Below are positions 9,301-30,014 of a stretch of DNA of 42,525 nt, piece by piece. The position numbers and the translations under genes were made by a program. The number at the start of each line of letters is the position of its first letter. The stretch's first letter is position 1. The notes under the pieces are model-generated. The model was not told where the DNA came from, searched no databases, and was given only the letters and a program-made list of their open reading frames with translations. Source of the stretch: Hyphochytrium catenoides (Eukaryota; Protista; Hyphochytriomycota); NCBI GenBank assembly GCA_900088475.1, contig FLMG01002017.1, positions 1 to 42,525 on the forward strand. The letters run 5' to 3'.

Positions 9301-12300
9301 TAAGTGAAGAGTCCTTCCCTTAGGTCCATGTCTGAAGTTCTGTTGGCGCTTTATCCCCTCTCTTATGTCTGGTAACGCTAGGCCATGCAAGAGTTCAGCA
9401 AAGCCTTAGAATGTGTCAGAGGACGAGAGACCCGTTGTAACATACGTGAACAAGCTCTGGCATCCATTAAAGATGACATATTGGGACATCTGAAGGATCT
9501 GTGTCCTGCGGAGGACCGCCTGCCTCTCACGGCCGAGGAGGAAGAAAGCTACGTTTTAAGCTGTCTGAAAGAAACCGCCTCCAAGATTCAGTCCCTTTTT
9601 CCCAAGTCTGCCGTCCTACTGGGCGTTCTGAACAGCAACGGGCAGGCACTTCGCGCTATAGCGCAAAGTGAGCACAGCATGGTGAGGGAGGAAGAAGACC
9701 GGGGTATGACTGTCGTGGAGGTTGATCGGGACAAGTGTGTGCCGTTGTTCAAGACAGTTATAGATCAGAAGAGGAATATCATTTCCTACCACTCGCAGTG
9801 CGCTCCTGGAGAGTTCATAGCAGCGGATTATCACGCGGCCGCAGTGCGGACGATGGAGGAGACGGAGTGGTCGCAGGAGACGAGAATCATGCAGAATACG
9901 ACGGTCCAGACCACAGAAGTCCCTCTCATGCCTCGTCCAGGTAAGGAGAGAAAGGGACAAAGCGGATCGTACTCATCTGAACAAACTTCGTTGATCATCT
10001 GCGGGTGCATCTCCTCTCGCTTGCGTCTAATGCATTTCCAATAATAGCCACAAGCTGAGGTAGCTCTTGCCCACCCTTCTCTTTTCCTCTCTGCAGGGAC
10101 AGGCTGGCCATACATCGCACTTCCTCTGACCGCGGAGGATGACGTTGTTGGCGTCCTTGTCATTGACTCGCTTGAAGCCACACCGAGAGGACGGCCAAGG
10201 GAGCAGCAGCCAGAGTTTGGAGTCATGTTCTTCCTTGCAGAGGTTGCCAAGGCGACGGGCCTGGCTGTTGACAGCTTTCGGAAGCTGGTGGCGCTTCAAT
10301 CCATTCGCTACAGCACCGCCTACCCGCTGCTCTCAGAGTATCTTTTATTCCACAATGCTTGTAGGGCTGTCAGCAGAACTCTGAGGCATGTGAAGCGTGC
10401 TGTTGTTGCCTTTGTGGCAGATCCCTCTGGCAAGGGCAGTGCTGCCTACCCTTCCTCACGGTCTCATCGCCTCCGTTCTCAAGGGAGTGACGTCCATGAC
10501 GAGGAGGGCGAGAAGAGGAAGAGACAGCGATACTCTGGCGTCCGGCTAAGAAAACGACAGGTCCCGCCTCATCCTGAGGGACAAACAGTCGGAGCTCCAC
10601 CTGGCACTCCTGGTCCAGTGCTCCGAACGATCTCTCGGGGCATGAGCTCAGTGCAGGGTTCAGGCACTGCCACACAGAGACCTCAGGGAGACGGTCGGTC
10701 CGTTAATTCTCGCGGCTCCGGTCTTTCTCTGACTAGGAGGCTTCAGCTTGAGACTGGATGGATGGTGATGGCAGACCAAGAACTAAACGAATTCGTCCCT
10801 TCTTCTTCTACGTCCCTTCTCGACCGTGTTCTCCTCTCTCTTCGTACGACATACGCAGGAGAGAAGAGAGCCACGACCGCACATTACAAAGTTCCGCCCA
10901 GCGAACCAGGGAACAGAGCTGAGAGGATACCTCTGGCGCTTGGCCGCACTCCAGCCGTGGATTGCGAGGACTTACCTGACAATGAGCTTTTAGACATTCT
11001 CCTCCCTCGGTGCGGAGAACTAAGTCTCTCCTCCATGGCGTCACTTCTACACCTCCAGGAGGGCCGTGCCATGCGTCTCGCTGCGGCAGTGGGCTCTCAG
11101 GTGCGCCACTTGTTAGAGGCACAACTCAGCACAGAACAGTCTTCTCGACGCCGCTACACGCTCTGGGAAGGTGATATGGCCAAGCTGAACTTTGGCCTGT
11201 GGCAACCTCTATACCGCGAGGACTTACACAGCTTCGGGGCTGTCCTGATGCAGATGGAGAACGAACTAGAGCTTGGAAGTGCCCACCTTGTCCTTGGAAA
11301 GACGTCCCCGCAAGAAAGTGATGTGCTCTTTAGTCTGCTGGTGCGTAGAGACGAAGAAACGAAGACCGTTGATGGAAGACGGAGCGCCGCCAGTGGAGAG
11401 TCAAGGAAGAGTCTGACGACAACGCTAGGGACAGCGGACAAATCCCGCGGAAAGGAGGAGGACAGACTGTTTAAAGGAGGGGAAAGTGGCGGCTCTTCTC
11501 GGCCTCCGAGTCAGTCAAAGCGTTCTGTCCGTCCTGATATAGCCCAGGAGAGGGTGCTCTTTCTCTCCGTGGAGAAGGAAAGAGGTCATGGATATGAAAG
11601 GGACAAGAGGTTCATTGCTGATGTCTCAAACGCTCTAAGAAGCGAGGTTAGTGGAGCCAGAGCACTCACTGCTACTTCCGTGAAAGTTTCTCCGTGAAAT
11701 GGTCACCTCAGTTGACTCGTTTGCTCCCTCTCTCTATCTGTCTTTCTCTCTATCCCACACTTCGGGCCCTGTCATGGCCTACTCTTCCATCAGCAGTCCA
11801 GCTTTTGGTTGCCAGGATCGACTTGTAGTCCATTCTCTCGCTCGACGCCAACGGCTAACCCGTCTACTCCGTCCATTTCACTAGCTGTCACTTCTGGAAG
11901 GACGAAGGCTGCGTAGCCTGTCTCGCGTGGCGTCTCTTGCCTTCCTAGATAACAAGGCTGAGGAGGTGCTCGGTGTCGGATATCCGCCTCTCTCCACCGC
12001 GCTGGAGGAGATCTACTGGGAGACACTGCTTAAGCTGCAGCGGGAGCTCGTAGCTCAGGTGCGCTGTTGTCTGGGGTCATGCTCCCTCTCACTCGTCGTC
12101 TATGCCTTCTACATTCTCTCGTTTTTCCTCTGTACCTTCTCTTCTGTCGCTCTGTCTGGGCCCTTTTGACCGCTCCTACCGCAGATCGCGTCCAACCTTC
12201 CTGGATGCAATGTTTACCTCGCGATGGCAGAGATGCGGCGCTCCTTTCTGCACATCTCTTCTGGCGCTTGCAATGCAGTGCACCAAGCTTGCGATCCAAG

Positions 12301-15300
12301 TTTTCTTTCTTCTACTTCACGTGAGACTTCAGCCCAGGACCGGCAGCAAGGCAGGGGGGAGAAGAATGGGGCAGAGAGGCTAGTGAACAAACGTCTCAAA
12401 GCGTCCACAACCTCGCTTCTCTTTCAATGCCTGGAAGGGCAGCAGATGAAGCTCCTTCATTGCTCTGATGCTCTATCCTTCGCATCGGCGAAAGTCTCAA
12501 TTGAACAAGCTCGTGTCTCTCTCCCGCACTACTCTTCAGCAGATATAGCTCTAGGACATGAGCTCCTGCCTCTCCTGGCTCTCCCCTTAGCAAATGGCAC
12601 GGGAGTTTTGGTTGTTGACTCCTTGAGCCGTCGCCTGCCGCTAGAGCAGCTCGGGATTCAGTGGCAGGGGAGAGAGGGAGAGAAAGGGAGCGTGGGGACA
12701 AGACCAGGGTCTTTCTTCAGAGTTGGTGACGAAGTGGTGGCAGAGGAAGGCATGCTTGACTTTCTTCTTAAGGCAGCTGATACTTTCTCTCGTTGCCTGT
12801 TAGAGGTGAGGAAACGAGGATTGGTCCGCAGGAGAGTCCAAAGGGAGAATACGCTGAAAGAGGTAATGAGGGAGACAGAGAGCTTCTTGCAGAAGGTTTC
12901 AGCGGACAGGCCTCTCTCTACTGGAAAGGCTCAAGGACGTGAGAGGATGCTATCTCCATCTTTCTTCCAGCGATTCTCACCTCCTGAGCTCCTGGGCGGC
13001 TATATAGACACTCTCCTTCGACTCGTTATAGAAACTCTTCCAGGATGTGATGCCTATGTCGGCTGGATGGCCTCTGACGGTGGACTGGTAGACTTCTTCT
13101 CTGCCTCTGGAAACAGCAGGATGGCAGGGAAGAGTGTGCTCAGAGGTGAGGCAGCTTTGATGCATATTCCCATGTGGATTCCCCGCGGTTTTCTCTCATT
13201 CGTAGTTGTTAACATTTTTCTCACATTCAGGAGTATCACCGTTGACCGTCCCTCAGTCATCAGCACATGTCTTGCCCTCACTGATGTCTTTCTAGCTCTT
13301 TGTGGCTTGCCATCCTTGTTTCGCTCTTCCATCTTGCTTGTCTCCCTTGTGGCCACGTACCTGTTTGAACCGGTCATTCTGGGGCAGGTCAAGGGTTGAG
13401 CTTTGAGGTGATTGATAGGAGACAGACGCTGTGTACGGAGAGCGTCCAATCATACGTCTCGCCCGAGTCAAACCTGAAGGCCAAGCTGTTCCACCCGCGA
13501 CAGTCCGGTCCTCTCATCATGGTTCCCCTGGGACCTGGACTTGGAGTGCTAGCTATCGATGGGTTTCCCGGCTGCGCAGGTGGGAGCAAGATTAGAGTCT
13601 AGGCTGTCCTCTCTCTTCATAACTCTTCCTTAAAGGTCCGCAGCTTCGAATTTTATAAGGAGATCTTCCTCCTCTAGGAGCACAATTTCTATCCGCTTTG
13701 TCCCCTGGCGGGCCTAAAGGTTCCTCTGTGCTGTTCTCTCCGTCTTCCCCAGCCTACACGATCTCAACCACGTTGCTTGGGGTTGCCTCTCATGCTCTAT
13801 GTCGTCGAATAACTCTCTTTGGCTTTGTTCCTTCCCACACTCTCTCCTTGGTCCGAAATTTGGCACATGGAAGGTGGTCGCTTTGACCCAACCTCGAGCC
13901 CAGAACCTGGCGTTTCTCAGTGGACAGAAGAGGTCCGTTTGATTGTTCCTTACGCTGCTTGAACTTGGCCGAATGGTCTATTCTCTTACCATCCTCGTTT
14001 TAAGATCTTTCTAGCTCTCTGTACTTCAGCTGTGTCCTCGCTCTGTTCAAGGGTTTCCTTTTGGATCGTTCTGACGGTAAAGTCACGCTTCCTCTTCTGC
14101 TCTCTCCCATTCACGAGCAGGTTGGGCGCATTCTGGGTTGCTCGGCTTACGAAGCTTCCAGGACGCAGCTATTGGCACGGCTACGGGAGCACCGTGTGAG
14201 CTATTATGTGAAGAGAGGAGAGATCCTGAATTCGGCGGCCAATGAGCTCTTCTCTCTCATCCCTCAGACAGAAGAGATCTCCTTATTTTCTCTTTCCACC
14301 GCGTGCTTGGGCGACGAGCGAAGCCGGTTTCCAATGAGGTTTAGACAGGCCAACCCTCTCATGGTCACCAAGGGCAAGCAAGTCCAACAGACCTCTCCAG
14401 ACGAGAGCGCGCTTGTAGCTCTTCAAGCAGGAGGCACAGGGGACGGGGACGGAATTGAGGGAGAGACGGCGAGAGAGAGCGTGAATTTTGTGGTAGATGG
14501 AGGAGAGAACAGTGATCCGGGCGTGACATATCTATCTCTCAGAGATTATGTCCTGAGTCCTGAGGATCTGGCCATAAGCTCCACCTGGGATGGAGCAAGA
14601 AGGATTAAAGAGCATAGCAGCCGCTCAGCACTGAGAATTCGGAAGGTGAACTGTCCCATCTGGCAGGAGGACAAAGAGCTGCTGATGCTGGTAAGANNNN
14701 NNNNNNNNNNNNNNNNNNCCTCGCCGGCCACCGTCGTCTACCTTGCTAACGACTCGTCGTTCCTTAGTTCCATTTGGCCAGGATTGGAGTTCGTGGTTGT
14801 TCTTGTGACTCATCCCTCTTCGCTTTTTTCACCCTCTCTCTAACATCGACTCCCTGCTCTTCAGTCTCATCCCTTGTAGAGTGGTACTACCCTGGGCATC
14901 TCCCCTAACTTTGATCTTAACTTCCCTAACCAGCTATGGTGGCTTAGCGTCGTTTTTTCCCTCGTGCTTCAGGTTAAGCATGAGATAAGCGCCTCTCTTC
15001 AGCTTATCGCAGAGAGAGGGATGAGAGTAGCCCTCCGACGCAACCTTCTGGCTGAGGCTGAAGAGACCATCTTGAGGGGTCTCGAGGAAGATTTTGCTGC
15101 TGCGGAGAAAGATGTCCTGATGGACAACATTTCCGCCCTTCATCGCCTCCTGGATGCGCAGACATCAAGAGCGGTCTCTCTCTGCTTGAGAGCTCTGCCG
15201 GGCTGTGTCTTCCTTTCTGCGGCACTGCAGCCCGGAGGACAGCTTGTTCGGCTGCAGGTGGTAGAGGACAGCAGAGAGAAGGGCATTGGACCGCCATGCC

Positions 15301-20147: not shown

Positions 20148-23100
20148 CTAGCTATCTCTAGCGTAATGCTCTCTAATGATGTCTCGGCCATGGTTCAGAT
20201 TGCTCTGAACGTCAAAAGCGACCGCTGGAGTAGTGCCTCCTCCTGGCTCTTTCTCCTTGTGAGAGATCTTTGTCTCCATCTCTTCCACCAGTGCATTCGC
20301 ATTCTCTCGAAATTGTCTCTCTCTCGCCTCACAAACTTCTACTGTCAGAGGCTGATTGGGCTGCACTAGACGGCACCAGAAGAGAAAGATATTGGGGGTC
20401 CCAGGTTGATTGAGCTCACGCCGCCACCGCGCTAAATCACGAGACAGAGTGCCTTCCCATTCCAGCAAAGCGCCAAACTCTGTAACAGACAAGAGATGGC
20501 CGGAACTAAGCAAAGACTCTGGGAGGGCAAGGGCGTCCACCAGAAGGAAGAGTGTCGCCTGCCAGCGCTTGGAGTGCCATGCCATCATCCTGCGCCAGGC
20601 GACAGAGCAAACGGAAACGCAGGTGCTTAGAACTTGGATTTAAGACCCGGCGTCAGGTCCACTAGCTCCCGAACTCTTACCGCTGCAAGGCCTCAGTGGG
20701 CTTCGAGGAAGGGTCAGAGCGCCATTCTGACCCGGCCCCGTCGCCTGAGCGCATCTTCTCCGTGCAGCGGCGGCTAAGACCTACTAGAATGTTCCTTTGC
20801 TCTCCTAAGAGCCATTCTGCCAGGATTGCTGACTCCACCTATATCAAGACAAAGGTCAGAAAGGAAGGTAAAGGACACCACTGCCCAGGAAGAAGAGAGT
20901 CAAAGCCACAAGAGGGCTAAGAAGCAGGCCGTAAATATTGACTGTGAGGAGTGGCCTTACCTCTTGATCTATAAGATACTCGAAGATTTGAAGGAGAGAG
21001 AGAAGAAGGGGAAAGCCAAGGGTTAGCGGTGAGTCCCTGGGCAGCTCGTCAAACATTGTGGTTCGGCTCGCATGAGGGAGACCGATGAGGCTCGGGAACT
21101 GCAGGATCCGCTCAATGAAGCGAAGAGAGAGGGAAGGACAGCTCTCAATCAGCCGACACAGAACTACATTGGCCAAGATGCTGGTCAGCTTGATCTTGTA
21201 CTGCAGGGCAGTGACAGAGGGAGAGAAAGCAGGATGCGCTTTTTAGTCGGTAGCTGAAAGGACTCGGAAAGTACGTGTCATGTGCAAAGTCTCAAGATGG
21301 ACGAGGACTGTACGGACAGGAAAGAGAAAGGCTGTCCACATAGAAAGGAACGAGACAAAGAGAAAGAGAGAGAGACAAAAAAGTAAAACCAGCGCGAACA
21401 AAGACAGCGCAAAGAAGCGATGACTTCTTTCTCTACGTAGGTATTTACCTGAAGCATGACGTTTCTTCGCTGTAGAGCTTGGCGCTTATCCTGTCCTTCC
21501 CAGTGAATTCGGAGCTTATCGAGAACTTCAAACATCGTGCACAGCTTGACAAAGCCTTTGTCTCCTAGCAGCTGAGCCTATACACGTAGCTATTGTGAGC
21601 CATGAGAGCTACTAGGTGGAAAATAGTGAAAGATAGAGATAAGAAGACATTATGAGGTGTTGAAGCCGGCTGGAATATGAGACGTAGACGCTTCGGAAAG
21701 TAGAATGTGCCTCTGAAAAATAGGACAAACAAGGTGGCAGACGGAGTGCATAAGAGAAAGTGTGTCCTGATGAAAACGACGGGAGAAAGAGACGAAGGTT
21801 AAGTTCAATTAAGCCAAATAACTATGAGTTGCACCTGTAGCTCTGGCGTCTTTCCCTTGTCCTGTCTGGGCATGATGGCAAGGTGAACGGGCTGCTGGTT
21901 TAAAGTCTCGAAGGCAATGTTGAAGCTTATCGGTTGGTCCAGGTGAGGAAGAGGCAGAGCGATGTATAACGTTGAAGGCTGGACTGTACTCTTCTCCTAA
22001 TCGGTACGAAGATATCAGACGATGCCGAAAAGATGAAAGCAAGACAGAGATAGCCATCTGCACAAGAAGTAGAAGCCGCCAGGTAGAAGAGCATGGACAA
22101 AACGAACGGGGAAATATCGTGGCAAACAAGCTAAGTGAGGGAGGACAGGAAGCAAAGAGCAGCAGGTATCGCTGCTACAGAACAGATATAAAGCCGACAT
22201 AGAAGGTAAATGGCCCTTTCTAAGCGGGAGGGAGAAGCGAGGCCCTGGGGAAGAGGTTCGGTAACTCTAACTCAGTCCATGATATTACCGGGCTGTCCTG
22301 AGGCGAGTGATCTCCTGCTTTGTCCTTGAGCTCCGCAAAGAGAGAGTGCGCTTTAAGATACTCGTTGGCTGTCTCTTGGTTGATGGTCCCTCGGCTCAGC
22401 ATGTAAGCGCACACTTCTGGCACCAGACTAGATGGAGACCCAGAAGCAACGGCAATGTTGCGAGCATGGAGAGTCATATGACCTGAGGCAAAGTCAGAGG
22501 AGAGTCTTTAGCTTGCGAGTGATCTAAGAGGAGAGGCTATTAGACAGATTGTGCTAGGGTGTGGGTTAGGCTATAGGAAGACAAGGCAAGGGATGGGCAA
22601 CTCATTTTCAATTAAGGAAGCAGCCTTAAGAGTAATGCAACGAGTAACGTATGCAAAGTCGAAACAATGATGAGGAAATGGCGACAAGCGACTGAGGAAA
22701 AAGCTAAGGATATTAGGTGGAAGACAGAGAATGAGGAAAAGAGGAGGAGCAGAGGATGTAGGGACTAAAAGAAGGGACAAATACCGACAAGTAAAGGAGA
22801 TCATGAGACAAAGAGAGGGGGAGAGAGGGAGAGAGAGAGAGAGAGGAGACTAGTGAGAGTGGGAAAAGAGACAACAGGGAAAGAGGAATCAGAGGCGCAC
22901 ACACAGACCGCTCTGGATGCCCGTGATGGCCAAAGCCCGGACGGCAGCAAAGTTCTGTGCAAGTCCGACGCACACGATGGTTCGTGCCAGCTCCTCAGCC
23001 GACGGTCGACGTAAGATCTCATGCGAGACGCGGTACCCGGGATGTGTTTGAACAGCACCTGCAGGAAAGGAGTAAGGGCATTTGATTAGACGGGAAAGTG

Positions 23101-23731
23101 ATTAGACAGAGAAGCAGATAACCGAAGGAATTCTAGAGAGAGTCAGAGATGTAAGCGGCGTTCAGGACAGACTGCAGCACCAAAAGGAGCTTTGCTTGCA
23201 TCGCCGATAGCAGAAAGAGAGGGAGTGGAAGAGCCCGGGAACAAGGGAGCCACCGCCAATATCAAGCACAGAAGAGTGAGGAGTAATACAAGGAAAGATC
23301 TGAAAGAGCAAGAGAGCACAAAAGAAAAATTATCAAGGCTCGAGACCTCCTTTACTTCCCACAGCGACAGGCAGCTCCAGCTCGCCGATCAGACATTTGG
23401 AGCCGTTGACTTCGGCGACACGGTAGGAGGAGAGGGAAGAGTAGCGCCCGGAGCGGCAGGCAAACGCGTGCGCCGCTGCCTCCAGAGCCCGGAAGTCTTG
23501 GCCGGTGGCCAGACAGACCGCATCAATGCCATTCATTATGCCCTGATCAAGACAGGAAGCAGATAATGAGCTAGATATCCTGAAGAGCGGAGGAAGCCCG
23601 TCTTTTTCTGCAGAGAGATCTAAAATTCGGCCCTGACTCTCCGCGTCACACCCGCCATTTTCAGTTCCGCATTTTTGAGTCGATGTTGAGCGATTATACC
23701 TCTTTCTATCCCTCCCTCTCCCTCTCCCTCT

Positions 23732-23769
<38 letters not shown>

Positions 23770-25734
23770 TTCTCTCTGTCTCTCTTTTTCTCTCTGTCTC
23801 TCTCTTTTGTTGACGTTCATTGGGTCTATCACTGTGTGGCTAGGCCATTCATAGACTCTCCCATCCACTCTCCTCAGCTCCCAAACGATCAGTCCCTAGC
23901 AGTATCATTTAAGCCTTTTCTACCTTATTATGCGTGCAGGCTCTGTACGGGTCGACTCTGGCAAATGTGACGGCTTCCAAGATTCTTTCTGCCACCTCTT
24001 CTCCCTTGACACCCTTGTAAGACAGTTGGTGCAAGGGGACACAGAAGCAGGCTGAGGCCCGCCTCTCAGGCGACAGATTGGTCAATATTCTCAGTCCACA
24101 GCGGCCGCCCGTAAGCTCAGCAAGCAGGGGACTGATCCCTAAGGAAGGCAAATGAGCCTTCTTGCCAAGCAGAGCCGGAAGGGAGGAGAGGCCCACTCTA
24201 GACTTGAAACCCAGATCAACAAGAAGAAGAAGAAGAAGAAAAGATAGAGACCAAAACTTGGAGGGCGCAGTGAACAAGGTGTAAGAAGTGCTTCGGAAAG
24301 GAAGACAAAGACCAGGACCAGGGAGGAAGAGAGAGTAGAGACAGGGAGAGAACAGCAATCTCTGACCCTCCGCCACTGTGTTAACCACGTTGGCTCCCAT
24401 GGCCTCACACACGTCCACGTCCAAATGCACCACAAGGAGCCCTTCTAACGCTTGCCCTTGGCAGAGTCCGTCTTCTTGTCTAGTTCGAGGATGCAGGCAA
24501 GGGTCACAAGGCTCAGCTTTCTGACCCTCGAGCCCTCAATGACTGTTATCTTTCAAGTAAAGAGGCTGCTCCGTGCTGTCTGGGTTTTCCCTTTTCCAAT
24601 CCTCTCCTTGTCCACTTTCTTTCACTCTCCGCGACGTAAACCGTCCCATGGCGCAATCCTAAATCCCTGCTGCCTACCTACTGGCTCTCGTCTACATGGC
24701 CATCTCAACCACTCGCCGGGACTCTCTTCGTTTTGATTCATGTCTAACTGCCACTCTTAGTTTCTGTTAGGTTCAACCACGTGGCTCACCTTGGAGGGTA
24801 CCAGGTCGGGTCCGTCTCTGAGACCACGCGTGCGTAACAGTCACGTACCCCTCCTCCTCTTCTCTTCATACTTAGGCAGAAGGTGTCCGCCGTCTCAATG
24901 ATCTCTGTCTTGCTCTTCTTCAGTGAAAGAAGCGCCTCTGACAGTGATGGAACATCTAGAATGTGCACCTGAGCCGTCATTATATTCCCGCTGTAGCTGG
25001 TACGGAACCCTCCGCTGCCAGCAATGAGCTTGGCTCCACCAGAGGCCGCGGCAATGACGGAAGGCTCCTCAATGGCCATAGGCACCACCTTATGCACTCC
25101 GTCAATCACGAAGTTCAGTCCTAGGCTGAAGGGAACAAAGGCCGATAGCGCGAGATAAAATGGGCACAGGAGAGGGAAAACGTATGAGCGGGAAGGGGGA
25201 GACGCAGGCGATTGTCAGAAGTGTACGCAGTCCGACGCTCTATCTTCTTCAAAACAGAGGTGGAAGGGCAAAATGCCACAGACAGAGGACCAGCTCACCC
25301 TAAGCTTGGTCCGGCTTAGCTTAGGATAGAGATGCAACGCTCCAGGCAATAAGGGCAGAGAATGTGATAAAACCACTGTTCGTAAAAAAAGAGGACATAC
25401 TCTAGGAGAGGAGTACGGAGAGAGACAGCAAGCGCTCTCGATAAGGGACTATGTAGTTGAGAGAGAAGACAGAGCACCAACCCGACAGGCACTCCTAGCA
25501 CTCCGATGCAGTTCTCCACCATCAGGTTCGCCAGTTTGACTGGAAGGCTGAAGAGATTCTCCTGGCCATCCGTCGAGCCCAGGGGCCGACTCAGGGGGCT
25601 CGAAGGGGGTGACCCCACTGCAAAGGGGACCAAGGGTTACTGAGAGCCGGAGCAATGGCAGATTGAGAGAAGAAGAAGAAGGTGAGAGAAAGAGGCCGTC
25701 GCTATGCGAGGACTAGCTTGGTCAGGGGAGCGAA

Positions 25735-25765
<31 letters not shown>

Positions 25766-26294
25766 AGAAGAAGAAGAAGAAGAAGCAATATGTGCATTTT
25801 ACGGAGAAAGAAGTAGAGACAAGTTTCCCAAGAGCCAAATGACCTGTGGGGCTTTGCTTCGTCTCTGGTCGGGCCGCTGCCTTGAAAATATTAGGTCGGA
25901 CGAATGAGAGCAAATCCAGTCGCTCGTGGTAGGTTTTATTATAAAAGCCGGACCACAGCCGCCGCTCCTCCTGCAGATCGGACGAGGCAGGACCGGACGT
26001 GGACTGCCGAGGCTCTCTGTCATGCTCTATGTGAGGGTTGGGCTGAGAAGTGTCATTGGAAGGCTTTCGGGAGTGAAACGAGTGAGCTACGGCCTGGCAT
26101 TTGGACAAGTTGGAGGTCAGCTCGGTCAGGACACGCCGGAGCTCCTCCTGTGGCCCTGAAGGGAGCAGGCTGATGTCCTGCCTGCCCTTAGCAGCGGTCA
26201 GGAAGCGACCGGTGCAGCGAAGCAGGTCTTGAGAGGCCAGAAGGAGCTCAAAGCCGTCATACAACGGCTCTGACTCTGCACAATAGCTCATCAT
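20148..26294 (-). CDS. HMGR: Class II (bacterial MvaA-type) HMG-CoA reductase with a ~110-aa N-terminal extension and a ~376-aa C-terminal extra domain, 13 exons, ~973 aa
   Basis: Exons 26294-25844, 25617-25482, 25125-24790, 24479-24367, 24138-23924, 23542-23347, 23058-22909, 22482-22289, 21996-21835, 21577-21449, 21200-20961, 20838-20681 and 20589-20148 are all GT-AG, phase-consistent and sum to 2,922 nt. Class II motifs: SGFYNK..HERL, MVENCIG, PMAIEEPSVIAAAS (catalytic Glu), RRGGG, EAMGANVVNT, RACTHNKGIMNGIDAV..ATGQDFRA (Lys, Asp), GLAQNFAAVRALAITGIQSGHMTLHARN (His). Confidence 0.9.
23712..23806. repeat. (CT)n microsatellite in an HMGR intron
   Basis: Direct reading. Similar (GA)n/(CT)n runs occur at ~22810-22850, ~25730-25785 and ~30720-30820. 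Confidence 0.9.
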
Positions 26295-27925: not shown

Positions 27926-30014
27926 TCACTTCTGATCTTCATAACCCTCAGGATGGAGGAGAGGCGGAGGAAGAGGATCAACGACGAAGGTTTTCGAGGC
28001 TGAAGGGAAGGCTTTGGAGCGCACAGAGTAGGAGAAGGTCCAGCCATAGCCTGCCGCTCCATAGTTCCCTCTGTTGTCCGCACATACAAGCCCGCCTTTG
28101 AAGGAAGGGACAAGTTTGGCGATACGCAACAGCGCACTCCTGCAAGCTTCTTCCGGCTGCAGTCCAGAGTTATCCTTAGCTGGTCAGGCGAGAGGGAAAC
28201 AGGAAGTATAGAAGAGAGAGAGAAGCAGAGGCGCACCTAACGGTTGAACCGCCATAGAAAGGAGGAGGAGAGATGGAAGTGGGAGAGAGAAAAAGAGAGA
28301 GAGAGGGAGACACGTCATCAAGAACAATAAGGTAGGCGGCGTACCGTCATTCCTTGCCTCATATTCTCCACTGCCTGCTCGGACATATTAGGATAAGCAT
28401 CGTTAATAGAGCGCTGTCCCAGGTGGTGTTTGGCCCCACCTCTCTCTACCTCTCTCTCTCTTTCTTTCTCACCTGATACGACGGCAAGAAGCGCATCATC
28501 ACATCTCCGTCGCCTGTGGCGGCAGCTCCTCCGACTTCATTGTCCACATAGCAACCAGAGCCCGGAATGGGAGAGTCTCCGACCCGCCTTTGTTGAAAGA
28601 CAGAGTAACAGTGTTGAACAGCCTGCTCAGAAGAGGAGAGAGAGACACACAAAGGAGAACGAGAAAAAGTGGACGGCCGTACCCCGCAATCTTATGGTTG
28701 GCGCCATTGCTGCTTGTTCCTCCTGTCTCAGTCAGCGGCTCAGAGAGGTCTGTCACCCAGCCCTGGCAGAGATGTTAGCCGCTTACCTGCGACGTTGCCC
28801 TCTGCGTCCACAATTACCTGCAAGGGCAGAGAGCGGAAGAGCTTTAGAGCTACGAAGAAGGCAGTGTCAATCATCAGCAGGGAAGAGCGTGAGGATCAAA
28901 GGCGATCCTTCCTGTCCACGGGACACGAGGTCTCTTACCATTCCAACCGTATCATGGTTCATCTCGCTCGTCTCCTGCCCTAGTCCTTGAGCAACTTCTC
29001 GCGGCTGGTCTGTCCTTGTCACGGTGTACGGCGGGCAGCTGCTGCTCTGGTTAATGAAATCTCTATAATAGTTCGGCTGACAGTGCCGTGCCCGCCACTG
29101 CTCAAAGTCTCCTATAGACTTCGACGTGGACAGAGACTCTTCAGGAAAGCCTAACATGCGTGCGAAGGACGTGGCGCCCTCTCCGACCAGCAAACTGTGG
29201 GCAGAGTGGTCCATCACTGCCCGCGCCACCTGCCCCGGCAGGGGATGGACAAGAGAAAAAGACAGAAAGAGCATAGTAATAAGACAGGGACCGAGGGAGA
29301 AAGAGAGAAGCAAAGGAAGAAAGAGACCTTGATGGCATCCTTAATCCTCCTCAAATAGGCTACGGCGCCGACGGCGTGTGTGCGTCCGTCCATAATCATC
29401 GCGTCCAGCGTCGTCTCTCCTAACGTGTCTGGACTGCCGCCGAACCCTACTGTCCCGTCGCACTGGTCTCGCTAGGAGAGAAACGGAATCGAGAGTAAGC
29501 GCGCGAGAGAGAGAGACAGGGAGAGAGGAGAAGCTAGTGAATGACAGGAGGAGCTAATGAGGAGGTAGTGACAGAAGTAGAGGAGAGACAAAGGAAAGAT
29601 AGGGCTCATACCTCACACTGACTGCAGCCTGATCCCCGAAGCGAGGCGGAGAGACAAAGAGTTAGAAGAACAAGAGCGGCAGACAGAGAGAGAGAGAAAA
29701 GAAGAATGGGAAGACAAGGTCAGTGGGGCAGCACGGTTAGGAAACACCCTAAGAGACAAGAGGACTGTGCCAGCAAAAGCGGTGGCAAATACAGTCAGAG
29801 AAGAAGAGAGAGAAGGAGGTGGGAAAAGGGAAGAGAGTGAAAGTCGAGACAGAGGGAAAGAGAAGAGAGAGAGAGAGANNNNNNNNNNNNNNNNNNNNNN
29901 NNNNNNNNNNNNNNNNNNNNNNNNNNNNNNNGTCCCGCTGCTCTCCCACAAGCTGCAGAAGAAAAGGGAGTTAGAAAGAGGCTGTCAGCGGCTATCTGCA
30001 TAAAAATTGAAGGA

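What the first reader, a model, noticed from the sequence alone, without database searches (positions are those of the whole stretch)
20148..22482. Class II HMG-CoA reductase fused to a C-terminal domain resembling a catalytically degenerate isoprenoid (terpene/prenyl) synthase fold: candidate built-in end-product sensor
Seen: the exon carrying the catalytic GHMTLHARN has a phase-0 donor (CCG|gtaata at 22289). Five more exons follow in matching phase down to the stop at 20148 and add ~376 aa. The ORF track shows these only as disconnected fragments. The tail looks mostly helical and includes FGALLEWEGTLS-RDLARWRRE-LNQPGTPNIFLFW, SKRWQATLFLLVDAL and CTMFEVLDKL. Established: class I terpene synthases carry DDxxD and an NSE motif (N/D)DxxSxxxE, often followed by G..N-hydrophobic (e.g. 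NDLYSYxKE..GE.HNLV). Typical bacterial class II HMGRs are soluble, end shortly after the His motif and lack the eukaryotic sterol-sensing domain. Inference: the tail may be a pseudo-enzyme of the isoprenoid-synthase fold with eroded metal ligands. It could bind FPP/GGPP and feedback-regulate the reductase in place of the missing membrane domain. The fold call rests on weak motif resemblance only.
Basis: partly seen in the sequence, partly recalled or inferred. Interest (0 to 1): 0.8.

Follow-up and report, generated by a model that had tools for sequence, protein, structure and literature searches.

The report
HMG-CoA reductase with terpene-synthase-fold tail
This protist gene joins the key enzyme of the mevalonate (isoprenoid) pathway to a previously undescribed C-terminal domain with the shape of a terpene synthase but without its metal-binding motifs; many eukaryotes share the fusion, and the domain may be a built-in sensor of pathway products, though that is untested.

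Summary
On the minus strand, the exon carrying the catalytic His (22482-22289) is followed by five GT-AG exons in matching phase, ending at the stop at 20148. A family profile built without the window hits these five exons in collinear order.

The fusion is not peculiar to this genome. Every long relative found (747-1149 aa) has a class II HMG-CoA reductase followed by the same ~330-450-aa tail. These include oomycetes, Capsaspora, Batrachochytrium salamandrivorans, a Nolandella transcript and several uninterrupted reading frames. No stand-alone tail was seen.

The tail has no Pfam or PDB sequence match. The AlphaFold2 model of the homologue's tail is confident (pLDDT 89, pTM 0.90). All 50 best Foldseek hits and all 50 best VIA-align hits (Z 14-18.6) are class I terpene synthases or prenyl synthases.

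Neither canonical metal motif is present in 55 tails. Instead, invariant Asn, Arg, His/Asp/Arg and Arg/Tyr residues sit at the expected spacings.

The sensor function remains an inference. I found no description of the domain in the literature searched. No RNA run was listed, and the joined window protein was never built.

The parts
25854..26294 (-). First coding exon (approximate 3' end): N-terminal extension plus the start of the reductase ('WSGFYNKT...').
   Evidence: ORF starting with ATG at 26294. Family profile positions 31-114 map to 26123-25854, E 8e-9. No Pfam hit.
25466..25567 (-). Reductase exon (approximate bounds), '...LANLMVENCIGVLGVPVGL'.
   Evidence: Profile positions 124-157, E 1.5e-10.
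24810..25136 (-). Reductase exon (approximate bounds) with the catalytic Glu region 'PMAIEEPSVIAAAS'.
   Evidence: Pfam HMG-CoA_red 4e-18. TIGR00532 1e-17. Best solved match is P. mevalonii 1qax, 5.8e-15. Profile positions 149-259.
24365..24445 (-). Reductase exon (approximate bounds), 'LLVVHLDVDVCEAMGANVVNTVAEG'.
   Evidence: Profile positions 288-314, E 2.7e-12.
23924..24139 (-). Reductase exon (approximate bounds) ending in '...DPYRACTHNK' (catalytic Lys region).
   Evidence: Profile positions 314-385, E 1.2e-30. TIGR00532.
23345..23551 (-). Reductase exon (approximate bounds), 'GIMNGIDAVCLATGQDFRALEAAAHA...' (catalytic Asp region).
   Evidence: Pfam HMG-CoA_red 1e-13. TIGR00532 2.5e-20. 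Profile positions 383-452.
22907..23059 (-). Reductase exon (approximate bounds), '...VGLAQNFAAVRALAITGIQSG'.
   Evidence: Profile positions 452-502, E 2.5e-24. TIGR00532 5.6e-12.
22289..22482 (-). His exon: catalytic GHMTLHARN, the flap helices and a linker. Phase-0 donor CCG|gtaata at 22289/22288. If this intron were retained, the frame would stop at 22222-22220.
   Evidence: Solved class II enzymes end 3-5 residues after query residue 43.
21835..21996 (-). Tail exon 1: small three-stranded beta unit ('PSTLYIALPLPHL...ISFNIAFETL...HLAI').
   Evidence: Tail profile positions 13-70, E 7.5e-16. Aligns with the homologues' 'PSMFYVEIPVPHL..LSLNIAFESI'. Strands 18-51 in the homologue model.
21449..21577 (-). 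Tail exon 2: first helices ('QLLGDKGF...MFEVLDKL').
   Evidence: Tail profile positions 67-108, E 6.8e-7.
20961..21200 (-). Tail exon 3: long helix 'KLTSILANVVLCRL' plus 'GFPLLLSLLQIFEYLIDQE'. The invariant Asn (codon 21170-21168) sits at the place expected for the Asp-rich motif.
   Evidence: Tail profile positions 101-197, E 5.6e-17. Asn invariant in 55/55 tails. The spacing argument is an inference.
20681..20838 (-). Tail exon 4: helix with the conserved 'EQ', then a variable loop. Phase-2 donor.
   Evidence: Collinear profile positions 196-229, but weak on its own (E 0.77). GT-AG sites and phase checked.
20148..20589 (-). Tail exon 5 with the stop codon. It carries 'SKRWQATLFLLVD' (Arg codon 20567-20565), 'EWEGTLSRDLARWRRE' (RDLARWRRE = 20441-20415), 'TPNIFLFW' and 'IREHY' (20174-20163).
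   Evidence: Tail profile positions 242-378, E 2e-32. The big HMMER search gave 30 relatives. Motif census.

Best explanation
Window 26294-20148 (minus strand) holds one 13-exon gene. It encodes a catalytically complete class II (Pseudomonas-mevalonii-type) HMG-CoA reductase. A ~20-residue linker after the flap helices leads into a ~375-aa domain: a small three-stranded beta unit followed by the alpha-helical class I terpene/isoprenoid-synthase fold. I put this structural part at about 0.9.

The domain belongs to an unnamed family. In this work it was seen only fused to class II reductases. It occurs in stramenopiles (oomycetes and this genome), Holozoa (Capsaspora), Fungi (a chytrid) and Amoebozoa, and on one prokaryote-like contig.

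The family lacks both Mg2+-binding motifs of terpene synthases. It keeps conserved polar residues at the corresponding places around the mouth of the fold:
- an invariant Asn where the Asp-rich motif would be;
- 'KRWQxT', with its Arg at the place of the pyrophosphate-sensor Arg on helix G1;
- 'EWEG(T/S)xAHDxARYxR(D/A)' at the NSE place on helix H (the window reads RDLARWRRE);
- 'IRxxY' at the C-terminal RY place.

Inferred mechanism (about 0.4-0.45): the domain is not a cyclase. It is a ligand-binding module that holds an anionic ligand directly through these basic residues, without the trinuclear metal cluster. The ligand is most likely diphosphate-bearing and isoprenoid, such as FPP, GGPP or a related pathway phosphate.

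The domain hangs on the C-terminus of the mobile flap that carries the catalytic His. Ligand-induced closure of the terpene-synthase fold could therefore restrain or release flap closure and tune reductase activity. That would replace the membrane and sterol-sensing domain these soluble enzymes lack.
For: - Exon model and phases.
- Collinear profile hits on the window.
- All seven long relatives found with the last exon carry Pfam HMG-CoA_red N-terminally and the tail match at the C-end.
- 48 further full-length fusions, 747-1149 aa.
- Taxa and names of the relatives, including a Trinity transcript of Nolandella.
- Uninterrupted ORFs of 1002, 747 and 861 aa.
- Short hits are exon fragments lying downstream of HMG-CoA_red ORFs.
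- The reductase part matches TIGR00532; homologues score above the curated cut-off. The best solved match is 1qax.
- Tail model: pLDDT 89.2, pTM 0.90.
- Foldseek top 50 are all terpene synthases or DabA/KabA, E 7.7e-5 to 8.5e-3, probability 0.99-1.00.
- VIA-align against 48,161 chains: the top 50 are all terpene or prenyl synthases, Z 14.1-18.6, 246-288 residues aligned.
- Motif census: 0/55 canonical NSE/DTE and no conserved DDxxD. N127, G285, E289, D297 and W316 are invariant. R254, H296 and Y377 are 54/55; R300 and R303 are 52/55.
- Spacing from Asn to His is 142 residues in the most compact member. The Asp-rich to NSE spacing in cattleyene synthase is 143 (PMC9543850). The sensor Arg lies on helix G1 (PMC9018054).
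- The tail co-diverges with the core, at 24-58% against 48-83% identity.
- Precedent for prenyl-diphosphate sensing that controls this enzyme: UBIAD1 senses GGPP (PMC9579336).
Against: - There is no RNA evidence from this organism.
- The window's own joined protein was never folded. The fold was shown for a homologue whose tail is 23-40% identical per exon.
- The mapping of conserved residues onto terpene-synthase motif positions rests on spacing and secondary structure. No residue-level superposition was available, because model coordinates cannot be read.
- Several conserved residues are acidic or polar (E210, Q211, D264, E289, E291). If they line the pocket, the ligand may not be a hydrophobic prenyl chain.
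- In many non-oomycete members the helix-H motif reads HDxx(R/S/T)xxxD, so some metal binding and catalysis are not excluded.
- The monomer model of a full-length member gives pTM 0.56, so no fixed interface between the two domains was predicted.
- No ligand binding or regulation has been measured anywhere.
Confidence: 0.45

Rival explanations
1. The tail is an active but non-canonical enzyme of the terpene-synthase fold, such as a prenyltransferase, a phosphatase-like enzyme or an unusual cyclase. It would act on a product of the pathway that the reductase feeds, so the fusion couples two catalytic steps.
For: - DabA and KabA, the best Foldseek hits, are active although their Asp-rich motif is degraded to NDxxA (bioRxiv 10.1101/2020.03.31.014811). 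This family also keeps an Asn at that place.
- Class IB large-terpene synthases (5yo8, Z 16.2) lack both canonical motifs yet are active.
- Helix H is very strongly conserved. In 31/55 tails it reads HDxx(R/S/T/N)xxx(D/E), and His, Ser/Thr and Asp can bind metal.
- The one prokaryote-like member lies in a cluster rich in oxygenases and a halogenase.
Against: - DabA keeps an intact NSE triad, which this family does not (0/55).
- No substitute Asp-rich motif is conserved.
- The window itself has Arg at the His position, and 22/55 tails have Ala at the last ligand position.
- Phytophthora sojae is reported to have a complete mevalonate pathway with no missing step (PMC9635365).
Confidence: 0.2
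2. The tail binds no small molecule. It is a structural module for oligomerisation, for scaffolding other mevalonate-pathway enzymes, or for localisation and stability, and merely descends from a terpene synthase.
For: - Loss of both catalytic motifs.
- Faster evolution than the reductase core.
- Long variable loops inserted in several lineages.
- No confident intramolecular docking (pTM 0.56).
Against: - The invariant and near-invariant residues are mostly polar or charged.
- By spacing they fall at the very places that hold the diphosphate in terpene synthases: Asn, KRWQ, HDxxRxxR and RxxY.
- A pure scaffold would be expected to conserve its hydrophobic core and an interface, not this set.
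Confidence: 0.25
3. In this genome the downstream exons form a separate gene, or the intron after the His exon is retained. The reductase would then end at the stop at 22222-22220 and the 'fusion' would be a gene-model artefact.
For: - There are no RNA data for this organism.
- An in-frame stop lies 23 codons into the intron.
- The second tail exon on its own could supply a Met.
Against: - The first tail exon has no start codon before its conserved beta-strand block, and an in-frame stop codon lies immediately upstream of its acceptor site.
- The 292-nt gap resembles the other introns in size and composition and has GT-AG ends in matching phase.
- Homologues join exactly these blocks in uninterrupted ORFs and in a transcript.
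- No stand-alone tail was found.
Confidence: 0.04

Closest known systems
Bacterial class II HMG-CoA reductase (Pseudomonas mevalonii type; PDB 1qax; NCBIfam TIGR00532)
   Same: The catalytic core matches. Every reductase exon of the window hits TIGR00532 and PF00368. The EEPS, NKG, GQD and GHMxLHARN regions are present. It is soluble with no membrane domain.
   Different: The solved bacterial enzymes are 423-458 aa and end a few residues after the flap helices. This protein continues for about 375 aa into a second domain. It also has an N-terminal extension of roughly 180 aa.
Class I terpene synthases (alpha domain), e.g. drimenol synthase 7cjy, pimaradiene synthase 7e4o, selinadiene synthase 4okm, cattleyene synthase 7y50
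   Same: Same helical fold over 246-288 residues, Z 15.9-18.6. The helix count is similar, there is a break in the G helix of the model, and conserved Arg/Tyr residues sit at sensor-like and RY-like spacings.
   Different: There is no DDxxD and no (N/D)Dxx(S/T)xxxE motif (0/55). No Pfam terpene-synthase model matches and sequence identity is 6-13%. An extra N-terminal three-stranded beta unit is present. The domain is always fused to a reductase.
DabA / KabA algal N-prenyltransferases (PDB 6vkz, 9m1w)
   Same: They are the best Foldseek E-values (7.7e-5 to 5e-4) and reach VIA Z 16.1. They are eukaryotic terpene-synthase-fold proteins whose Asp-rich motif is degraded to start with Asn (NDxxA), and they carry a beta-hairpin appendage (bioRxiv 10.1101/2020.03.31.014811).
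   Different: DabA keeps the NSE triad and Mg2+ and is catalytic and stand-alone. The superpositions are loose (rmsd 13.8-18.5 A over the Foldseek alignment). This family has HDxxRxxR instead of NSE.
UBIAD1-HMGCR system of animals (a GGPP sensor acting on class I reductase)
   Same: The logic is the same: a protein of prenyl-diphosphate-using ancestry binds GGPP and thereby sets the fate of HMG-CoA reductase (PMC9579336, PMC9314443).
   Different: UBIAD1 is a separate membrane protein of the UbiA fold, is catalytically active, and acts through ER-associated degradation of a membrane-bound class I enzyme. Here the candidate sensor is soluble, has the terpene-synthase fold and is covalently fused. 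Its regulation is hypothetical.
Catalytically inactive small subunits of heteromeric geranyl diphosphate synthase (from my own knowledge, not checked here)
   Same: They are a precedent for an isoprenoid-synthase-fold protein that has lost its Asp-rich motifs and serves as a regulatory partner.
   Different: They have the trans-prenyltransferase subtype of the fold, are separate polypeptides and partner with a prenyl synthase, not a reductase.

Membership tests
Class II HMG-CoA reductase (TIGR00532 / PF00368) | Match to the family profile over the whole catalytic core | tested here: met
   Window exons hit TIGR00532 at 1e-17, 1.2e-4, 2.5e-20 and 5.6e-12, and only weaker or no class I models. 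Collinear coverage of family-profile positions 124-584. Full-length homologues score 281-327 bits against a cut-off of 260. The window exons were not joined, so no single summed score exists.
Class II HMG-CoA reductase (TIGR00532 / PF00368) | Catalytic Glu, Lys, Asp and His (E83, K267, D283, H381 in P. mevalonii; numbering from memory) | tested here: met
   'AIEEPSV' aligns with 1qax 'VVEEPSI'. '...THNK|GIMNG', 'ATGQDFRA' and 'GHMTLHARN' are read directly from the translation.
Class I terpene synthase (isoprenoid synthase type I alpha fold) | All-alpha terpene-synthase fold | tested here: met
   Model of the homologue tail (P0002:613-1002): pLDDT 89.2, pTM 0.90. The 50 best Foldseek matches and 50 best VIA-align matches are all in this superfamily, Z up to 18.6. 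The window exons cover the whole domain profile. The window's own joined tail was not folded.
Class I terpene synthase (isoprenoid synthase type I alpha fold) | [quoted passage not shown] | tested here: not met
   No conserved DDxx[DE]: 6/55 tails have a chance match in variable loops. At the place expected from spacing there is an invariant Asn followed by hydrophobic residues.
Class I terpene synthase (isoprenoid synthase type I alpha fold) | NSE/DTE motif (N/D)Dxx(S/T/G)xxx(E/D) | tested here: not met
   0/55 tails. The family motif is HDxARYxR(D/A) and the window reads RDLARWRRE.
Class I terpene synthase (isoprenoid synthase type I alpha fold) | Sequence-profile membership (Pfam terpene-synthase families) | tested here: not met
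   No Pfam family at E<=1 for any window exon and none shared among 37 members at E<=10. The PDB profile search was blank at E<=10.
Class I terpene synthase (isoprenoid synthase type I alpha fold) | Mg2+-dependent ionisation of a prenyl diphosphate | not testable with these tools
   Needs an enzyme assay.
trans-Isoprenyl diphosphate synthase | Two Asp-rich motifs (FARM, SARM) and profile similarity | tested here: not met
   Fold matches are somewhat weaker than to cyclases (Z <=15.8). hhalign of the family against E. coli IspA gave probability 0.11 over 12 columns. No Asp-rich motifs.
DabA/KabA N-prenyltransferases | Retained NSE triad with Mg2+, and NDxxA in place of DDxxD | tested here: not met
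   An Asn at the first place is shared, but the NSE triad is absent. Motifs of DabA are taken from bioRxiv 10.1101/2020.03.31.014811.

The most novel reading that the evidence does not exclude
The tail is a metal-independent receptor for a prenyl diphosphate (FPP or GGPP), built from a decayed terpene synthase. It gates the catalytic flap of a soluble class II HMG-CoA reductase. This would be a covalently built-in end-product feedback sensor, inherited as a unit across several eukaryotic supergroups, including the oomycete plant pathogens and the amphibian chytrid. It would therefore also be a lineage-specific allosteric site absent from plants and animals.
Probability: 0.3. Interest if true: 0.85.

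Novelty: new variant of a known kind. Interest (0 to 1): 0.68.

Why it matters
HMG-CoA reductase is the control point of the mevalonate pathway. In animals, yeast and plants that control resides in an N-terminal membrane domain. How eukaryotes that use a soluble, bacterial-type (class II) enzyme control flux is not known.

This work shows that such eukaryotes carry a conserved extra domain of terpene-synthase shape on the reductase. The domain was never seen alone, and its conserved basic residues sit where terpene synthases hold the diphosphate.

That turns 'how is class II reductase regulated in eukaryotes?' into a direct experiment: measure binding and kinetics with and without prenyl diphosphates, and with and without the tail.

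It would also add a clear case of a terpene-synthase-fold pseudoenzyme. In addition, it marks a domain in oomycete pathogens and Batrachochytrium that their plant and animal hosts are not known to have.

The orthologous proteins are already in public databases, annotated simply as HMG-CoA reductase. What is new is the recognition and interpretation of the domain, not the sequences.

Tried and rejected
- **RNA evidence.** The look-up of sequencing runs listed no run.
- **Word-index search and protein atlas with the last exon.** Both were blank. Only the exhaustive HMMER search found relatives.
- **Pfam on exons and on 37 family members, and a PDB sequence-profile search.** No family was found for the tail.
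- **ESM Atlas shape search.** Nothing useful; the best hit was DUF5685 at TM 0.41.
- **Two scans of GTDB genome contigs for prokaryotic carriers.** The first used the P0011 tail and the second a five-sequence alignment with a KRWQAT pattern. No relative was confirmed.
- **hhalign of the family against E. coli IspA, to place the motifs.** It was insignificant (probability 0.11). Its 'GLPL'/'GLPT' match conflicts with the spacing, so I rejected it.
- **Full-length monomer model, to look for a fixed interdomain pose.** pTM was 0.56, which is uninformative because the enzyme is an obligate oligomer.
Rejected on spacing.
- **Separate-gene reading.** Rejected on comparative grounds (see rivals).
- **Literature.** Eight searches found no description of the domain (two searches served for motif comparison). 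The Phytophthora sojae pathway paper does not mention it. Absence from the held library does not prove that it is undescribed.
- **Not done, by the operators' rule.** The window's exons were never joined. The joined protein was therefore neither searched nor folded, and a homologue stood in for it.
Full report
**What is in the window**

The region lies in an intron-rich eukaryotic gene on the minus strand. Translating the three minus-strand frames and reading the sequence shows the exon that carries the catalytic His motif. It runs 22482-22289, reads ...G|HMTLHARNIAV... and ends at CCG|gtaata in phase 0.

Five further open segments follow. They are bounded by AG acceptors and GT donors, and their phases fit one another: 21996-21835, 21577-21449, 21200-20961, 20838-20681 (phase 2) and 20589-20148, ending in TAG (bounds corrected by hand). 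The introns are 91-292 nt long and C/T-rich on the sense strand, like those inside the reductase part.

**Is it more than chance, and is it one gene?**

No RNA run could be listed for this DNA, so the test had to be comparative. The word-index search with the last exon was blank. The exhaustive HMMER search found 30 relatives.

Seven of these are long proteins of 747-1050 aa. In every one, Pfam finds HMG-CoA_red in the N-terminal part, and the match to the window's last exon lies at the C-terminal end. A region-restricted search from the closest of them found 48 more full-length fusions of 747-1149 aa.

Named members come from several groups:
- Oomycetes: Phytophthora, Pythium, Lagenidium, Peronospora, Plasmopara, Hyaloperonospora, Saprolegnia, Aphanomyces, Achlya and Thraustotheca.
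- Batrachochytrium salamandrivorans.
- Capsaspora owczarzaki.
- A Trinity transcript of the amoebozoan Nolandella.
- A protein filed under Schistocerca gregaria.

In three cases I checked the DNA. The fusion is a single uninterrupted reading frame of 1002, 747 and 861 codons.

The short hits are not stand-alone tails. On their contigs they lie downstream of HMG-CoA_red reading frames on the same strand, or they begin within the flap helices. So I saw no free-standing copy of the domain.

A profile built from 55 tails, without the window, hits the window's five tail exons and nothing else. The hits are in collinear order and cover profile positions 13-378 of 388. A full-length profile maps onto 12 collinear segments from 26123 to 20154.

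The first tail exon aligns with the block that directly follows the flap in all homologues ('PSxFYVE...LNIAFE'). It has no start codon ahead of that block. I therefore treat the separate-gene reading as very unlikely (about 0.04) for this genome, pending RNA data.

**The reductase part**

Each reductase exon matches NCBIfam TIGR00532 (class II, 'degradative' type) and Pfam PF00368. The best solved relative is the P. mevalonii enzyme 1qax. The Glu, Lys, Asp and His regions are intact.

Solved class II enzymes stop 3-5 residues after the point that aligns with '...NEYLK' in the His exon. So the extension is real relative to the bacterial enzymes.

**The tail**

No window exon and none of 37 family members has a meaningful Pfam hit. 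A profile search of all PDB sequences was blank.

I folded the tail of the closest contiguous homologue (P0002:613-1002) with a 37-row alignment that included the window's exons as separate rows. The model is confident: mean pLDDT 89.2 and pTM 0.90. It has three short strands followed by about 14 helices.

Foldseek against the PDB returns only class I terpene synthases and the algal N-prenyltransferases DabA/KabA among its 50 best, with E from 7.7e-5 and probability 0.99-1.00. An independent all-against-all alignment to 48,161 representative chains gives the same answer. The 50 best are all terpene synthases or trans-prenyl synthases, at Z 14.1-18.6 with 246-288 residues aligned at 3.4-4.6 A.

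The tool's own caution is that helical proteins can reach Z of about 14 by chance. Here the top hits exceed that, cover nearly the whole helical domain and belong to one superfamily without exception.

**Motifs**

In 55 full tails there is no (N/D)Dxx(S/T/G)xxx(E/D) motif and no conserved DDxx(D/E). The following is conserved instead (P0002-tail numbering):
- S123 and N127 are invariant, within 'LLSILxN'.
- R254 (54/55), Q256, T258 and D264 lie in 'KRWQATxxLLxD'.
- G285, E289 and D297 are invariant. H296 is 54/55, and R300 and R303 are 52/55, within 'GxYxEWEG(T/S)xAHDxARYxR(D/A)'.
- N311 and W316 are conserved.
- R374 (39/55) and Y377 (54/55) lie in 'IRxxY'.

The window has all of these except His, which is Arg (RDLARWRRE).

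In the most compact member the Asn lies 142 residues before the His. In cattleyene synthase the Asp-rich motif lies 143 residues before the NSE motif (PMC9543850). The conserved Arg of KRWQ lies 42 residues before the His, on a helix that breaks just after it in the model. This matches the pyrophosphate-sensor Arg at the end of helix G1 in bacterial and fungal synthases (PMC9018054). The Arg/Tyr near the C-terminus recalls their RY pair.

This mapping is an inference from spacing and secondary structure. I could not read the model's coordinates, and a profile comparison with E. coli IspA was not significant.

**How it probably works**

What is shown: the fusion, its conservation, the fold, the loss of both metal motifs, and a strongly conserved polar and basic set of residues.

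What is inferred: those residues ring the mouth of the old active site and hold an anionic group directly, without the three-magnesium cluster. Ionisation chemistry would then be lost while binding is kept.

The domain follows the last flap helix after about 12-20 residues. From established knowledge of the P. mevalonii enzyme, the flap carries the catalytic His and must close over the active site. A ligand-driven open-to-closed change in the tail could therefore set flap mobility.

The idea that a prenyl diphosphate controls this enzyme has a precedent in animals, where UBIAD1 senses GGPP and governs degradation of the class I reductase (PMC9579336). I put the ligand-sensing reading at about 0.4-0.45, and a prenyl diphosphate as the ligand at about 0.3.

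The rivals are:
- A non-canonical active enzyme (about 0.2). DabA works with NDxxA in place of DDxxD but keeps NSE. Many members of this family read HDxx(R/S/T)xxxD.
- A ligand-free structural module (about 0.25).

The monomer model of a full-length member gave pTM 0.56, so it says nothing about docking.

**Evolutionary notes**

The tail diverges faster than the core (24-58% against 48-83% identity) but in step with it. This fits inheritance as one unit.

One member (P0011, 747 aa, no N-terminal extension) sits on a contig with tightly packed, overlapping genes. These encode an FtsX/ADOP-type permease, two Rieske oxygenases, and PhyH, Cupin_8, WelO5-like and TauD-like enzymes. This is prokaryote-like. 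However, two scans of GTDB species genomes confirmed no relative.

Earlier notes of this scan call the genome an oomycete-like stramenopile. That agrees with the nearest relatives here but was not tested further.

**Novelty and verdict**

The orthologues are public and are annotated simply as HMG-CoA reductase. In the held literature I found no mention of the tail or of its fold. I cannot exclude that structure-based databases already flag it.

I rate this a real feature and a new variant of known kinds: a terpene-synthase-fold domain without the defining motifs, obligately fused to a class II reductase. Interest is moderately high, because it offers a concrete, testable answer to how these eukaryotes control the pathway.

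Noticed in passing
L005:2591-4834 and neighbours (Logan SRR20005815 contig, 18.6 kb): The most compact fusion protein (P0011, 747 aa, no N-terminal extension) lies among tightly packed, overlapping genes. These encode an FtsX/ADOP-type permease, a FemAB-like protein, two Rieske/KshA-like oxygenases (one weakly like the sterol demethylase SdmA), and PhyH, Cupin_8, WelO5-like and TauD-like enzymes. The layout is prokaryote-like and resembles a biosynthetic cluster. No GTDB genome carried a relative.
   Followed up: partly
P0008 (XP_049849846.1, 'Schistocerca gregaria LOC126320410', 426-kb contig): A full fusion protein is filed under a locust. Its nearest relative here is the Nolandella (Amoebozoa) transcript (58% core, 40% tail identity). 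The contig may therefore belong to a protist associate or contaminant rather than the insect.
   Followed up: no
L006:4126-5391: In a compact eukaryotic metagenome contig, a mevalonate diphosphate decarboxylase gene lies about 4.6 kb upstream of the reductase fusion gene (10001-12586). This may be loose clustering of pathway genes.
   Followed up: no
window 26294-25854 (minus strand): The gene starts with an N-terminal extension of roughly 180 aa before 'WSGFYNKT'. It has no Pfam match but aligns with the extension of oomycete orthologues (profile positions 31-114, E 8e-9). Capsaspora, Nolandella and the prokaryote-like member lack or shorten it. Its function is unknown.
   Followed up: partly
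window 23700-23850 and 22800-22880 (minus-strand introns): There are long (GA)n/(CT)n and GAGAGG-type microsatellites inside introns of the reductase gene. Sense-strand introns are strongly pyrimidine-rich throughout the gene.
   Followed up: no
window 14697-14718 and 29879-29931: Runs of N (22 and 53 bases) mark assembly gaps in the window, outside this gene.
   Followed up: no
window 24810/24445 exon pair: I could not place a GT-AG intron with a consistent phase between the exon ending '...DPTWYPP' and the exon starting '...LLVVHLDV' by eye. The true donor or acceptor may be non-obvious or a GC donor. This does not affect the tail.
   Followed up: no
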